Below are positions 8,250 to 62,064 of a DNA stretch of 64,000 nt, piece by piece. Both the position numbers and the translations under genes were made by a program. The notes beneath the pieces were generated by a model, which saw only the letters and a program-made list of their open reading frames with translations, searched no databases and was not told where the DNA came from. Position 1 is the first letter of the stretch. Each line of letters begins with the position of its first letter. The stretch covers positions 124,001 to 188,000 of the IMG/VR virus record IMGVR_UViG_3300032242_003291; one strand, written 5' to 3'.

Positions 8250-8324
8250 TGGGTGAATAACGGAAATCGTACCCGTGACAACTAAAACCACAATCTAGTG
8301 CTCTACCAACTGAGATATATTCCA
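8250..8324 (-). pseudogene. Degenerate tRNA-His(GUG)
   Basis: Cloverleaf with GTG anticodon, but mismatched pairs 1-72 and 2-71, no G-1, D-stem mismatch, T-loop TACGATT. Confidence 0.7.
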
Positions 8325-8725: not shown

Positions 8726-8730
8726 AAAAA

Positions 8731-8858
8731 CAGGAAAGGAGAAGATGGTTCAGTGGACATCTCCTTTTATGATTGGCATTACTTATGGTAGTTTAAACTC
8801 CGACGATGTCTTATTCCAACCACTACCAGGTTTTTACATCATCATTCCCCAATCAACC
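8731..8858 (-). ncRNA. Candidate structured ncRNA between tRNA-Trp and tRNA-Tyr
   Basis: Stems TGATTGG/CCAATCA and TGGTAGT/ACTACCA, crossing GATGATGT/ACATCGTC, 3' hairpin AAAGGAGA/TCTCCTTT. Confidence 0.6.
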
Positions 8859-8863
8859 TTTAG

Positions 8864-10059: not shown

Positions 10060-10067
10060 CAAAGATA
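10060..10067 (-). promoter_or_regulatory. Bacteroidota-type -7 promoter box before tRNA-Glu
   Basis: TATCTTTG on minus strand with TTTG about 19 nt upstream. Confidence 0.7.
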
Positions 10068-10087
10068 CAACCAATATTTCAAATAAC

Positions 10088-10124
10088 AAAAAAACCCCGA
10101 ACTTCATTTCTGTCGTTCAGGGCT
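10088..10124 (-). terminator. Intrinsic terminator of attenuator candidate 1
   Basis: AAGCCCTGAAC…GTTCGGGGTTT stem followed by T-tract. Confidence 0.8.
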
Positions 10125-10948: not shown

Positions 10949-11398
10949 TTATTTTTTTATTTTTTTTCTCCCCCTCCATGTAGGAGTTAATGAATGACAA
11001 TTAGGACAAAGAACTTTTAAGTTAGTAATATCATTATTTTTATTATTACCGTCCATATGGTCAACTTCCATACTAATTGGTTTACCCATCCATTCTGTTA
11101 TACCGCATTCTTCACATTTGTTTCCTCTTTCTTCTTTAACCCATTTTTTGATACTCCATATATGTGCAGTTTCATAATTTCGTTTTTTTCTAAATGTTTC
11201 CCTTGATTTAGTTATTTTTTCTGGATTAGAGTTATGACTATAATCACAATTTAACCACCATTCAGATTTAAGAACACCTTCACTAATTTTTTTCTTTATA
11301 TCTTCCGTTCTTATTCTTGAATTAGCACAAGATTTAGAACAAAATTTACCACTACCAAAAGAACCATCATGTTCTTTTTCGCATTTTAAGCATTTCAT
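10949..11398 (-). CDS. Free-standing HNH endonuclease with N-terminal Cys-rich zinc finger
   Basis: CLKC…FCSKSC N-terminus; CEECG…EVDHMDGNNKNNDITNLKVLCPNCH HNH motif. Confidence 0.9.
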   Translation of the reverse strand: MKCLKCEKEHDGSFGSGKFCSKSCANSRIRTEDIKKKISEGVLKSEWWLNCDYSHNSNPEKITKSRETFRKKRNYETAHIWSIKKWVKEERGNKCEECGITEWMGKPISMEVDHMDGNNKNNDITNLKVLCPNCHSLTPTWRGRKKIKK

Positions 11399-11527: not shown

Positions 11528-11555
11528 AATATATTACAAAGATAAGGAAAAAAAA

Positions 11556-12296
11556 CTATTCGGCAAAACTTTCTTCGTATATTGTATCTGTATCGTTTTC
11601 TTCTGTATTGTAAGTGTGAACTAACTCAATTTCCATATTATTAAAATTAAATATAAATTCACCATCAGAACCTTCATTTATTTCCCACCCACCATAGTAA
11701 TTTTCAAGTTGTCTATAACACCAATCTTCTATGTCTGTTGGTACTCCATCGCTTGTTTCATCAAAACTACTTTCAATATATCCTGAGTCACCAGAACCAT
11801 TATATTTTACTGTCAATATTCCTCCATTAGGTACTTGAATATCTTCAAAAACACCATCTTTCTCCCACTCTTCGAATATTTCCTGACCATCCTCATCCAC
11901 CCAATGATGAGCACTTGAATCACTTTTTGCATAAAATGTCCACCAATGTTTCACAGATATTTCCTGTGTTTTACTGTCTATATCAAATTCAATTCTTTCA
12001 TAATTCAAATCTTGTTCGTTAGGTTCTTTGAATAAATTTTTGTCTTCAATATAATCTCCAATTTTTTTAAGGATTTGTGTTAATCCATTAGGAATTTCAG
12101 CACTGTAGTTGTTTGAAAAATGAGTTTCTTGTTGCCAATTTATATCGGAAAAATTGAAATCAGACCATCCGTCAATATCCAATTCAATACTGCCATCTCT
12201 CATTCCAAGTGATGACAAGTATCTACAGACTCTTCTGAGGTATTGTTTATCCTCAGGGGTTAATATATTAAACGAATTTACATTTCTTTTTTTCAT
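11556..12296 (-). CDS. Acidic protein with C-terminal DUF6878-like domain
   Basis: VKYNGSGDSGYIE…GGWEINEGSDGEF pattern. Confidence 0.6.
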   Translation of the reverse strand: MKKRNVNSFNILTPEDKQYLRRVCRYLSSLGMRDGSIELDIDGWSDFNFSDINWQQETHFSNNYSAEIPNGLTQILKKIGDYIEDKNLFKEPNEQDLNYERIEFDIDSKTQEISVKHWWTFYAKSDSSAHHWVDEDGQEIFEEWEKDGVFEDIQVPNGGILTVKYNGSGDSGYIESSFDETSDGVPTDIEDWCYRQLENYYGGWEINEGSDGEFIFNFNNMEIELVHTYNTEENDTDTIYEESFAE

Positions 12297-13281: not shown

Positions 13282-13864
13282 TCTTCCAAGAATCTTTATT
13301 GTAGTTTAATAATATAAAATCTTCCTTCAAATAATCATAAACAAATTGGGCTAATTCATCAGTATAAAATGATTGCCAACTTCTTGGGTCAATACTTTTA
13401 TATGAATTATGACGTATGTGGTTATTAAAAATATATTCTAATTCATCATTAAAATTTTCTTTAATGAACCATAAGTTATTTAAGTCTTCCTCTAACGATT
13501 CAAATCTAACAAAATAATTGGGCATTTTATTCTTAAACGCCTTAACTAAAGAAATATACATTTGTGTTGGTAGAACGTATAAATCATCCATTTCAATGGG
13601 TATTTTTTTTCTAACCCATATTTCAAAGGGGACCTTTTTATCAATTATTTTTGTTTCAATCGAAAAGTTATATATAGAAACTAAACGAGAATAGGGATTT
13701 CTAACATTAGCTGTTAGATAGTAATCCATATACTCAGTGTTATCTATGAACTTATGTTGATTGGAATCGGAAAAATTAAAATATTCCACTATTGGTCTAC
13801 AAGAACGAGTTGCCGCTCTCATTGGTAAAAACCAAAATATTTTTAATTTTTTAGAATATGGCAT
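13268..13864 (-). CDS. Sulfotransferase-family-like protein, paralog of 12308..12934
   Basis: LPMRAATRS, NVRNPYSRLVS, VRFESLEEDL motifs. Confidence 0.65.
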   Translation of the reverse strand: MPYSKKLKIFWFLPMRAATRSCRPIVEYFNFSDSNQHKFIDNTEYMDYYLTANVRNPYSRLVSIYNFSIETKIIDKKVPFEIWVRKKIPIEMDDLYVLPTQMYISLVKAFKNKMPNYFVRFESLEEDLNNLWFIKENFNDELEYIFNNHIRHNSYKSIDPRSWQSFYTDELAQFVYDYLKEDFILLNYNKDSWKNGTS

Positions 13865-14097
13865 TATAAAATTTTCTCGTCTTGTTTTTTTCGAGTTTCA
13901 GACTCTTTTACCATTCTAACCCAAGTCAAAATCACATCGATAGGTGCCAACAACCATGACAAAATTACAACCATTAATACGTCCAAACCTGGAGATAAAC
14001 CAATCTGACCATCGTTGTATTCTTTTTTATACTTTACTCCAAGTTGATAAAAACAATAGAGTAAACTGATAATGTAATAACCAATAAAAATATTCAT
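13864..14097 (-). CDS. Small two-TM membrane protein
   Basis: True start MNIFIGYY at 14097; the longer track ORF runs through tRNA genes. Confidence 0.6.
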   Translation of the reverse strand: MNIFIGYYIISLLYCFYQLGVKYKKEYNDGQIGLSPGLDVLMVVILSWLLAPIDVILTWVRMVKESETRKKQDEKIL

Positions 14098-14111
14098 AAT
14101 AAAAATTTTAG

Positions 14112-14184
14112 AGCCTCCTATCGGAATCGAACCAATGACATTATCATTACAAATGATACGCTCTACCTGCTGAGCTAAGGAGGC
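14112..14184 (-). tRNA. tRNA-Thr(UGU)
   Basis: TATCA-TTTGTAA-TGATA anticodon arm. Confidence 0.95.
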
Positions 14185-14189
14185 AAATA

Positions 14190-14294
14190 TTGGAACTTTG
14201 CGGTATTCCAACTGATGGGTCAGTCCCCACACCTCGGTTCGTGAAATGTAAGTTTCCAACCGATGATACTCTTCTGTCTTACACATTAGTATCC
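14190..14294 (-). ncRNA. Candidate pseudoknotted RNA 3' of tRNA-Gly(GCC)
   Basis: GATACT/AGTATC crossed by GTGTAAG/CTTACAT; further stems TCGGTT/AACCGA and TTGGAA/TTCCAA. Confidence 0.6.
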
Positions 14295-14299
14295 AGATG

Positions 14300-14372
14300 A
14301 GCGGAAGACCAGGCTCGAACTGGCCACCCCAACCTTGGCAAGGTTGTGCTCTACCGAATGAGCTACTTCCGC
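14300..14372 (-). tRNA. tRNA-Gly(GCC)
   Basis: CAACC-TTGCCAA-GGTTG anticodon arm. Confidence 0.95.
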
Positions 14373-14378
14373 TTAAGA

Positions 14379-14425
14379 GTGTAGTGGCGGATATCACACC
14401 TGTGGTTACTACACGTTTTATCCAC
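14379..14425 (-). ncRNA. Candidate H-type pseudoknot 3' of tRNA-Gly(UCC)
   Basis: GTGGATA/TATCCGC crossed by GTGTAGT/ACTACAC. Confidence 0.6.
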
Positions 14426-14429
14426 TTTG

Positions 14430-14502
14430 AGCGGGAGACCAGGCTCGAACTGGCCACCTATAGCTTGGAAGGCTATCGCTCTACCGAATGAGCTACTCCC
14501 GC
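14430..14502 (-). tRNA. tRNA-Gly(UCC)
   Basis: TT-TCC-type loop (CTTCCAA) closed by ATAGC/GCTAT; nearly identical body to tRNA-Gly(GCC). Confidence 0.95.
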
Positions 14503-14504
14503 AT

Positions 14505-14612
14505 GTTCCCGTTTTTTCCTCACATTTAGCCCAATCAACAGTGAGACATTGATTGGATTTTGATTATAGAAGCTTACAAGGTTTCCCCATTAAGCCGTTA
14601 CCACGGGCAAAC
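14505..14612 (-). ncRNA. Candidate multi-stem RNA between tRNA-Asp and tRNA-Gly(UCC)
   Basis: Closing CCCGT/ACGGG, GGCTTA/TAAGCT arm with GAAA loop, CCAATCAA/TTGATTGG arm whose loop CTCAC can pair with GTGAG. Confidence 0.55.
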
Positions 14613-14620
14613 TAATTCAG

Positions 14621-14861: not shown

Positions 14862-14869
14862 CAAAGATA
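14862..14869 (-). promoter_or_regulatory. Bacteroidota-type -7 promoter box before tRNA-Pro
   Basis: TATCTTTG; a TTG 20 nt upstream lies in the terminator loop. Confidence 0.65.
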
Positions 14870-16008: not shown

Positions 16009-16079
16009 AATTTTTAATTTTGAAACACAAAGATAACATTTAATTTGATTCTACAAAAATTTTGTTGATATTTATTATT

Positions 16080-61920: not shown

Positions 61921-62064
61921 ATAATATTTCTAAGAACTATTATCGAGATTTCAAACCATTTGGTGTAGTAAACTTGTTACTCTCACTTCAGGTACATTTT
62001 TATTGTCCTCCCGATTTCTATACAAAGATAAGAACTTTTTTACAAACCGTCAAATCTTTTTTTC

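What the first reader, a model, noticed from the sequence alone, without database searches (positions are those of the whole stretch)
14190..14425. A covarying pseudoknot follows both tRNA-Gly genes: candidate tRNA 3'-trailer element
Seen: 4-5 nt after each Gly discriminator begins an H-type pseudoknot. Copy A: P1 GTGGATA/TATCCGC, P2 GTGTAGT/ACTACAC. Copy B: P1 GATACT/AGTATC, P2 GTGTAAG/CTTACAT. They share GGATA…GTGTA…ACAG…TATC, and the P2 differences are compensatory (GT/AC versus AG/CT). Copy B adds TCGGTT/AACCGA and two more hairpins. Known: HDV-like theta ribozymes occupy this position in gut phages and cut tRNA 3' trailers. These copies have HDV-like P1/P2 crossing but lack recognisable P1.1 and J4/2 catalytic elements. 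Inference: a different ribozyme, a processing signal or an exonuclease roadblock.
Basis: partly seen in the sequence, partly recalled or inferred. Interest (0 to 1): 0.75.

Follow-up and report, generated by a model that had tools for sequence, protein, structure and literature searches.

The report
Phage tRNA-array pseudoknot RNA family
The spacer after the first tRNA-Gly gene is one copy of an uncatalogued, phage-only RNA of about 50 bases that folds into a pseudoknot (a different one from that first proposed, and not HDV-like) and carries a loop built to pair with a second copy; its job is unknown, but it is a well-supported new structured RNA.

Summary
Comparison with 62 related phage contigs (42 distinct sequences) changes the picture for copy A. 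P2 is real (100% paired, two covarying pairs). Instead the 5' tail pairs with a bulge (H1, 4 bp), which still gives a pseudoknot with P2, and a 4-bp hairpin (H3) stacks on P2. The 7-base loop of H3 always holds a 6-base self-complementary word (seven different words), which points to a kissing dimer. The new fold is 99.9% paired, with 109 doubly changed cells. The family is absent from Rfam and from 185,579 prokaryote genomes. It is single-copy here and not tied to tRNA-Gly or to tRNA 3' ends: some copies lie next to a promoter or stand alone. It occupies a "tRNA slot": A-rich leader, G1, 7-bp stem, then U and C as after the arrays' tRNA genes. It has no HDV-like, pistol or tRNA model match. 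Copy B is a separate, rarer 115-base structured spacer. Function is inferred only: most likely a small RNA cut out by tRNA-processing enzymes that acts as a dimer.

The parts
14430..14502 (-). tRNA-Gly(UCC); discriminator U at 14430, no CCA encoded
   Evidence: ARAGORN, Rfam, sequence
14426..14429 (-). C74-like C, then the AAA spacer/5' tail of element A
   Evidence: AAA invariant or nearly so in A1. C follows the discriminator in 98.6% of tRNA genes of these arrays
14422..14425 (-). H1 5' strand (GUGG)
   Evidence: Pairs with 14402-14405. 100% paired, five pair types at the second pair
14415..14421 (-). L1, A-rich linker (AUAAAAC); A at -2 and -4 from P2 invariant
14408..14414 (-).
   Evidence: 7 bp, 100% paired in 42 sequences, two pairs with changes on both sides
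14402..14405 (-). H1 3' strand (CCAC), inside the 7-nt bulge between P2 and H3
14397..14400 (-). H3 5' strand (GGUG)
   Evidence: Three of four pairs covary
14390..14396 (-). H3 loop: U plus the self-complementary word GAUAUC (14390-14395)
   Evidence: Loop positions complementary in 99.2% of cells, seven different palindromes
14386..14389 (-). H3 3' strand (CGCC), directly abutting P2
14379..14385 (-). P2 3' strand
14373..14378 (-). U (42/42) and C (40/42) after P2, then a 4-nt spacer to the next tRNA
14300..14372 (-). tRNA-Gly(GCC); discriminator U at 14300
14288..14293 (-). B: P1 5' strand GAUACU (pairs with 14265-14270)
   Evidence: Present. Invariant in both lineages, so untested
14278..14284 (-). 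B: P2 5' strand GUGUAAG (pairs with 14246-14252)
   Evidence: In the second lineage the outer pair is lost
14265..14270 (-). B: P1 3' strand AGUAUC
14258..14263 (-). B: third helix 5' strand UCGGUU (pairs with 14234-14239)
   Evidence: Two pairs changed on both sides and one wobble change in the L023/L095 lineage
14246..14252 (-). B: P2 3' strand CUUACAU
14234..14239 (-). B: third helix 3' strand AACCGA
14215..14230 (-). B: hairpin GUGGG...CCCAU
   Evidence: Inner pair G:C becomes U:A in the second lineage; loop varies
14189..14212 (-). B: 8-bp hairpin, stem invariant, loop variable
14112..14184 (-). tRNA-Thr(UGU) that ends spacer B

Best explanation
Spacer A is a member of a conserved, phage-only family of RNAs about 50 nt long. 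Shown: a 7-bp stem (P2) carries a 4-bp hairpin (H3) stacked directly on it. The 7-nt bulge between them pairs with the 5' tail (H1), which makes a pseudoknot. The A-rich linker L1 must run along P2. The H3 loop is one free base plus a 6-nt self-complementary word. Inferred: two molecules join loop to loop (a kissing dimer). The unit sits in the array like a tRNA gene, with an A-rich leader, G at +1, a 7-bp stem and then U and C. It is therefore most likely cut out of the precursor by the host's tRNA-processing enzymes, or made from its own promoter in other phages. It would persist as a compact, nuclease-resistant small RNA that acts in trans as a dimer on a partner not yet known. A protein that handles tRNA acceptor ends is one guess. 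It is not an HDV-like ribozyme and not a tRNA-Gly-specific trailer. Spacer B is a different, rarer structured spacer RNA.
For: Family: an unbiased scan anchored on the tRNA-Gly 3' end gave 10 distinct A-like spacers. A motif scan gave 62 contigs, all true members, with 42 distinct sequences. Fold: 99.9% of cells paired, 10 pairs and 109 cells changed on both sides, covariation 0.405 against 0.133 in shuffles (0/500) and at most 0.10 when slid. There are 14 G-U cells and one A-C cell, so the tRNA strand is the RNA strand. Loop palindrome: the three position pairs are complementary in 99.2% of cells, with up to 4 pair types. The inner two pairs cannot form within one 7-nt loop. Specificity: model R1 scores members 64-81 bits with nothing in between. 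There is one copy in the 317-kb genome, no Rfam hit at E<=10, and 5 chance hits but no member in 596 Gb of prokaryote genomes. tRNA-slot features: C follows the discriminator in 504 of 511 tRNA genes, and the element has U 42/42 and C 40/42 after P2, and UCCA in 14/42. Its leader has A at -2 and -4, like the tRNA leaders. Independence from tRNA 3' ends: in four loci it follows a Bacteroidota-type promoter box, in others no tRNA is adjacent and a U run follows. Transcription: metatranscriptome contigs match A and B exactly, while the flanking ORF DNA has about zero depth.
Against: No experiment and no read ends: the RNA contigs break at graph branch points, so the termini are unknown. Dimerisation is inferred from sequence alone, and the complex predictor does not accept RNA-only jobs. 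The motif scan fixed several P2 and junction bases, so their invariance is partly by construction. The H3 loop does not look like a T loop, and tRNA models do not match. Invariant A's in L1 may reflect triplex packing rather than an RNase P leader. No partner is known. The phage has no CCA-adding enzyme, RtcB or Ro60 gene.
Confidence: 0.45

Rival explanations
1. A new class of self-cleaving ribozyme that cuts at its own 5' edge and so trims the upstream tRNA's 3' trailer, doing the job theta ribozymes do in gut Bacteroidota phages.
For: Small, highly conserved, pseudoknotted, and phage-only. Its 5' edge lies 1-2 nt after the upstream tRNA's discriminator in nearly all tRNA-linked copies. Promoter motifs suggest a Bacteroidota host, as for most theta ribozymes, and theta ribozymes are also about 40% not tRNA-linked. 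The phage lacks its own tRNA-end repair enzymes, which is neutral.
Against: No match to any Rfam ribozyme model at E<=10. There are no unpaired bases between H3 and P2, where HDV-like and pistol ribozymes keep catalytic or scissile bases. The conserved unpaired bases are almost all A's, which is typical of packing rather than an active site. A self-complementary loop is not a feature of known small self-cleavers. Most tRNA junctions in the same arrays are 3-7 nt with no such element, so tRNA ends mature without it.
Confidence: 0.12
2. A cis-acting part of the tRNA precursor: a stable fold that blocks exonucleases, insulates the two near-identical tRNA-Gly genes from mispairing, or offers an entry site for a processing nuclease.
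For: It lies inside tRNA arrays in most loci, between the 87%-identical Gly genes here. It has a compact pseudoknot with an A-rich linker, and an A-rich single strand just 5' of the fold.
Against: Copies directly after a promoter, copies with no tRNA on either side, and copies followed by a U run have nothing to insulate or trim. A cis role does not explain the self-complementary loop, which is kept through seven different words. There is only one copy per array.
Confidence: 0.2
3. The reader's fold (P1 GUGGAUA/UAUCCGC crossing P2, HDV-like topology) is the functional structure of copy A.
For: Both helices exist in the window copy. 7/7 crossing helices occur in 0.1% of shuffles. The minimum-energy fold uses this P1.
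Against: P1 pairs in 69% of cells. One pair holds in 7 of 42 sequences, and three others are broken in 9-22 sequences. Sequences with other loop palindromes lose the 3' strand while the 5' strand stays the same. Only one base separates P1 and P2 3' strands, leaving no room for P1.1, P4 or J4/2. P2+H3 alone is already -10.6 kcal/mol, against -5.8 for P1.
Confidence: 0.03
4. The conserved feature acts at the DNA level (a protein-binding palindrome or recombination site in tRNA arrays), not as RNA.
For: 6-bp palindromes are typical protein sites, and the element has varied neighbours, as if it moved between arrays.
Against: The palindrome's sequence is free as long as it stays self-complementary, so a sequence-specific protein is unlikely. 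There are 14 G-U cells against one A-C cell, and the crossing helices H1 and P2 covary. It is always co-oriented with the flanking tRNAs, and it is present in RNA libraries.
Confidence: 0.04

Closest known systems
Theta (minimal HDV-like) ribozymes next to phage tRNA genes (Kienbeck et al. 2024, PMC10879173)
   Same: About 50-60 nt, in phage genomes, often starting within a nucleotide or two of a tRNA 3' end that lacks CCA. Hosts are mostly Bacteroidota, and some copies are not tRNA-linked.
   Different: Theta units have P1, P2, P3 (ACC/GGU), a CC/GG P1.1, L4 and a J4/2 starting with the catalytic C. Here there is no P3/L3, no P1.1 and no bases between H3 and P2. The 5' helix is 4 bp and pairs with a bulge. 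There is no Rfam HDV-type hit.
Phage T4 RNAC and RNAD, small stable RNAs of unknown function
   Same: Small phage RNAs of unknown function (PMC9697503). From my own knowledge they are encoded in the T4 tRNA region and released by processing of the tRNA precursor.
   Different: They are more than 100 nt with no sequence relation. No pseudoknot plus self-complementary loop has been described for them, as far as I know.
Kissing-loop dimerisation hairpins (HIV-1 DIS; ColE1 RNA I/II) - from established knowledge
   Same: A hairpin loop carrying a 6-nt self-complementary word with one or a few unpaired flanking bases. The word varies but stays self-complementary.
   Different: The setting differs: a 50-nt phage RNA with a pseudoknot, not a retroviral leader or plasmid antisense RNA. 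Dimerisation here is inferred, not shown.
tRNA acceptor/T-arm minihelices and tRNA-like processing handles (mascRNA, viral TLS) - from established knowledge
   Same: A 7-bp stem starting G:C, a hairpin with a 7-nt loop stacked on its 3' strand with no linker, then U and C (UCCA in a third). It has an A-rich leader and a position in the array equivalent to a tRNA gene.
   Different: The H3 stem is 4 bp rather than 5. The loop is not a T loop, and there are no D or anticodon arms. An extra pseudoknot joins the leader to the bulge. tRNA models do not detect it.
Pistol ribozyme (topology only; from established knowledge)
   Same: The order of strands matches: pseudoknot 5' strand, A-rich linker, P2, pseudoknot 3' strand, hairpin, P2.
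   Different: There is no P1 hairpin around the 5' pseudoknot strand, no G-U scissile dinucleotide between the hairpin and P2, and no hit to the Rfam model.

Membership tests
HDV-like / theta ribozyme | Nested double pseudoknot: P1 and P2 crossing, plus P3-L3 and P1.1 | tested here: not met
There is no CC/GG P1.1 and no conserved P3.
HDV-like / theta ribozyme | Catalytic C opening J4/2 between P4 and the 3' strand of P2 | tested here: not met
H3 abuts the P2 3' strand with 0 nt.
HDV-like / theta ribozyme | Match to curated covariance models | tested here: not met
   No HDV-type family at E<=10 in 8.5 kb or in the 256-nt region.
HDV-like / theta ribozyme | Mg-dependent self-scission at the 5' edge | not testable with these tools
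   Needs in vitro transcription and a cleavage assay.
Pistol ribozyme | P1 hairpin loop forming the pseudoknot; G-U cleavage site between P3 and P2; model match | tested here: not met
   The 5' pseudoknot strand is a free tail, there are no bases between H3 and P2, and there is no Rfam hit.
tRNA / tRNA-like minihelix | 7-bp acceptor-type stem with G1:C72 followed by a discriminator and C74 | tested here: met
   P2 is 7 bp in 42/42, with the outer G:C invariant, then U 42/42 and C 40/42. C74 is present in 98.6% of the arrays' tRNA genes.
tRNA / tRNA-like minihelix | T arm (5 bp, T-loop consensus) and D/anticodon arms; detection by tRNA models | tested here: not met
   H3 is 4 bp and its loop is a palindrome, not UUCRANY. 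There are no other arms. ARAGORN and Rfam tRNA do not call it.
Kissing-loop dimerisation hairpin | Loop word that varies yet stays self-complementary | tested here: met
   Seven perfect 6-nt palindromes, with the three loop position pairs 99.2% complementary.
Kissing-loop dimerisation hairpin | Dimer formed in solution | not testable with these tools
Needs native gels or SEC-MALS.
The A-type RNA family defined here (model R1) | Score in the family range | tested here: met
   Window copy A scores 79.2 bits, against 64-81 bits for members.
The A-type RNA family defined here (model R1), applied to copy B | Score in the family range | tested here: not met
   Best score over spacer B is 0 bits with filters off.

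The most novel reading that the evidence does not exclude
A new kind of phage small RNA: a pseudoknotted mimic of the tRNA acceptor end that is produced by the tRNA-processing machinery, pairs with itself through a kissing loop, and as a two-headed dimer captures or misleads a host enzyme or defence protein that works on tRNA 3' ends. Alternatively, it is a new self-cleaving ribozyme class that needs dimerisation.
Probability: 0.2. Interest if true: 0.85.

Novelty: categorically new. Interest (0 to 1): 0.66.

Why it matters
Natural small RNAs that are built to dimerise are rare. Phage tRNA arrays are usually read as nothing but tRNA genes. Here one array slot holds a strongly covarying non-tRNA fold found only in phages, and the neighbouring slots hold further structured spacers. 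That makes these arrays a place to look for new RNA functions such as anti-defence decoys, processing devices or ribozymes. It also gives a compact, well-defined 50-nt target for structure and biochemistry. And it shows that a plausible HDV-like reading of a single sequence can be overturned by comparison with relatives.

Tried and rejected
(1) Rfam at the gathering threshold and at E<=10, on 8.5 kb and on the 256-nt region: only tRNAs and noise.
(2) Threading an HDV/theta descriptor with my own script: too permissive, with no enrichment of the catalytic C over A/G/U controls, so it was uninformative and dropped.
(3) Treating B as a diverged copy of A: model R1 gives 0 bits or less. A short H1-like pairing in B is compensated in L023 but broken in L095.
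(4) More B relatives: a viral scan found only L020. The metagenome scan found 10 relevant contigs in two lineages. MAFFT misaligned P2 of B, so the pairs were compared by eye.
(5) RNA ends from metatranscriptomes: only assembled contigs were available, and their ends are graph breaks.
(7) Sigma-70 promoter and terminator scans near free-standing copies: nothing. Bacteroidota-type boxes fit instead.
(8) A generic survey of palindromic hairpin loops in 118 spacers: 43 against 35.7 +/- 5 in shuffles, not significant.
(9) Neighbouring genes (sulfotransferase-like, DUFs, HNH) and genome-wide searches for CCA-adding enzyme, RtcB, Ro60 and RNA ligase gave no functional link.
(10) Literature searches found no description of such an element.

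Full report
WHERE WE ARE. The window is bases 124001-188000 of a 317-kb IMG/VR virus record, estimated complete. It is seen in freshwater metagenomes. Eighteen tRNA genes lie on the minus strand between 7607 and 14851. tRNA-Gly(UCC) ends with discriminator U at 14430. Spacer A (14429..14373, 57 nt) runs straight into tRNA-Gly(GCC). Spacer B (14299..14185, 115 nt) runs into tRNA-Thr. Neither Gly gene encodes CCA.

THE OBSERVATION. In A, two crossing 7-bp helices arise in 0.1% of dinucleotide shuffles. In B, a 6/6 crossing pair arises in 8.7% of shuffles. No Rfam family other than tRNA matches either spacer, even at E<=10 on a 256-nt search.

RELATIVES. A scan of viral contigs for the 3' end of this tRNA-Gly is blind to what follows it. 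It returned 43 loci, and their spacers fall into recurring classes. Ten distinct spacers resemble A. A second scan used a degenerate motif that fixes parts of P2 and the junction but leaves H1's 5' strand, the inner H1 bases and all of H3 free. It returned 62 contigs, all genuine, with 42 distinct sequences. The same motif found 5 chance matches and no member in 596 Gb of prokaryote genomes.

Two of its pairs change on both sides, with two U-G intermediates. His P1 is paired in only 69% of cells. Its second pair holds in 7 of 42 sequences.

The data fit another fold:
- H1: GNNG at 14425-14422 pairs with CNNC at 14405-14402.
- H3: 14400-14397 pairs with 14389-14386, closing a 7-nt loop.
- Overall: 99.9% of cells paired, 10 pairs and 109 cells changed on both sides, and a covariation score of 0.405. 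Shuffles give 0.133 (0 of 500 reach the observed score) and slid partners give at most 0.10.

H1 crosses P2, so A is still a pseudoknot. Geometrically it is a long hairpin (P2 plus H3) whose 7-nt bulge pairs with the 5' tail. The A-rich linker L1 has to run the length of P2. There are fourteen G-U cells against one A-C cell, and the element always has the orientation of the flanking tRNAs. Both facts place the structure on the tRNA strand.

THE LOOP. The H3 loop is one base plus a 6-nt word that is self-complementary in 41 of 42 sequences. Seven different words occur: GAUAUC, GGUACC, CCUAGG, UCUAGA, GACGUC, GCUAGC and CUUAAG. The middle position pair shows four pair types and is never broken. 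The stem register is offset by one base from the palindrome, so this is not simply a longer hairpin. The inner two pairs cannot form inside a 7-nt loop. Selection for self-complementarity as such is best explained by loop-loop pairing of two molecules. This is an inference; no tool here could test it. A second spacer class in related phages also carries UGUACA, GUCGAC or GUAC in a hairpin loop.

CONTEXT. The family is tight: 64-81 bits with model R1 and nothing between that and noise. It is single-copy in this genome. Upstream neighbours are tRNA-Asp, Asn, Gly, Ile, Glu, Lys or unrecognised tRNA-like 3' ends. Downstream neighbours are Gly, Met, Thr, Ser, Glu, Leu, Cys or Gln.

Four loci have the element directly after a TAnnTTTG box. 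TTTG-N17-21-TAnnTTTG promoters, the Bacteroidota type, are enriched in the window: 18 against 5.5 expected. Other copies have no tRNA beside them and are followed by a U run. So the element is not a device of tRNA-Gly 3' ends.

It does look like an occupant of a tRNA slot:
- In 511 distinct tRNA genes of these loci the base after the discriminator is C in 98.6%, while full CCA is encoded in 9%.
- After P2 the element has U in 42/42, C in 40/42 and UCCA in 14/42.
- P2 is always 7 bp and starts G:C, and H3 abuts it as a T arm abuts an acceptor stem.
- L1 has A at -2 and -4, the commonest letters in the arrays' tRNA leaders.

Against full mimicry, H3 has 4 bp, its loop is not a T loop, and tRNA models do not see it.

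EXPRESSION. Contigs from four metatranscriptomes match A (54 nt, no mismatch) and B (100 nt, no mismatch; 181 nt, 3 mismatches). Flanking ORF DNA has about zero depth. This supports transcription but says nothing about ends.

SPACER B. Only two lineages were found in viral and metagenome collections. P1 and P2 of B do not vary, apart from loss of one outer P2 pair, so they are neither supported nor refuted. The helix UCGGUU/AACCGA becomes AUGAUU/AAUCGU, with two double changes and one wobble. One hairpin swaps G:C for U:A. The last hairpin keeps its stem and varies its loop. B shares a 5' stretch of about 19 of 28 bases with A by eye, but scores 0 bits or less with R1. I treat it as a separate structured spacer, possibly a distant derivative.

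COMPARISON WITH KNOWN SYSTEMS. Theta ribozymes are delimited as P1, J1/2, P2, ACC, U, CC, L3, GGU, P1', GG, L4, C-led J4/2 and P2'. They self-cleave in vitro next to phage tRNAs. The A family lacks P3/L3, P1.1, L4 and J4/2. Its strand order resembles a pistol ribozyme without P1 and without a scissile dinucleotide. T4 RNAC and RNAD are a precedent for small phage RNAs of unknown function. Literature searches found no description of this motif.

VERDICT. There is a real, covarying pseudoknot, but with a different partner helix, and A and B are not two copies of one thing. Function is not established. My best reading, at about 0.45, is an excised or independently transcribed, compact small RNA that dimerises and acts in trans. 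A cis-acting processing or stability role (0.2) and a new ribozyme (0.12) remain open.

Noticed in passing
window 14503-14619 (-), between tRNA-Asp and tRNA-Gly(UCC): A third structured spacer (117 nt) has relatives in L005, L010, L038 and L045. Its closing helix has 3-4 compensated pairs. It also has an inner hairpin whose loop (CUCAC) can pair with GUGAG downstream; relatives show UUCAC/GUGAA and GUCAAC/GUUGAC, read by eye.
   Followed up: partly
window 8727-8862 (-), between tRNA-Trp and tRNA-Tyr: A 136-nt spacer belongs to a cluster of nine related spacers in other phages. The shared blocks suggest another conserved RNA.
   Followed up: no
all held loci; window tRNA genes: Across 511 distinct phage tRNA genes the base after the discriminator is C in 98.6%, yet CCA is encoded in only 9%. 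This 'C74 only' rule hints at a particular 3'-end or RNase P requirement in the host.
   Followed up: partly
window, e.g. 10060-10090(-), 11537-11567(-), 16028-16057(-), 62023-62054(-); TATCTTTG also just upstream of tRNA-Pro near 14865: Bacteroidota-type promoter boxes (TTTG-N17-21-TAnnTTTG, mostly TATCTTTG) are three-fold enriched. The host is probably a freshwater Bacteroidota.
   Followed up: partly
window 8255-8322 (-): Rfam calls a weak tRNA (36.6 bits) that ARAGORN does not report. It may be a degenerate or unusual tRNA next to tRNA-His.
   Followed up: no
window 10949-11398 (-): An HNH endonuclease ORF sits inside the tRNA array. Sulfotransferase-like and DUF6915/DUF6878 ORFs separate the array's two halves.
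   Followed up: no
L003, L005, L016, L024, L096, L101, L111-L117 (class 3); L005, L018, L019, L026-L029, L032, L044 (class 4): Two further spacer classes follow tRNAs in related phages. One has a hairpin loop carrying UGUACA, GUCGAC or GUAC. The other has a small pseudoknot and a hairpin with a conserved UGAUGAR loop. Neither is in the window genome.
   Followed up: partly
L046, L047, L054-L057, L061, L064, L075, L078-L081, L090 and others: In another phage clade the A-type element lies just upstream of a conserved protein of about 90 aa. The protein is 37-100% identical among 19 loci and has no Pfam match. Sometimes a tRNA-Met or a small lipoprotein ORF lies between them. The protein is absent from the window genome.
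   Followed up: partly
window 13864-14457 (-) and 14297-14491 (+): Two mechanical ORFs (197 and 64 aa) run through the tRNA genes and both spacers and are almost certainly not genes. A short membrane-like ORF seems to start at the ATG near 14095, after tRNA-Thr.
   Followed up: no
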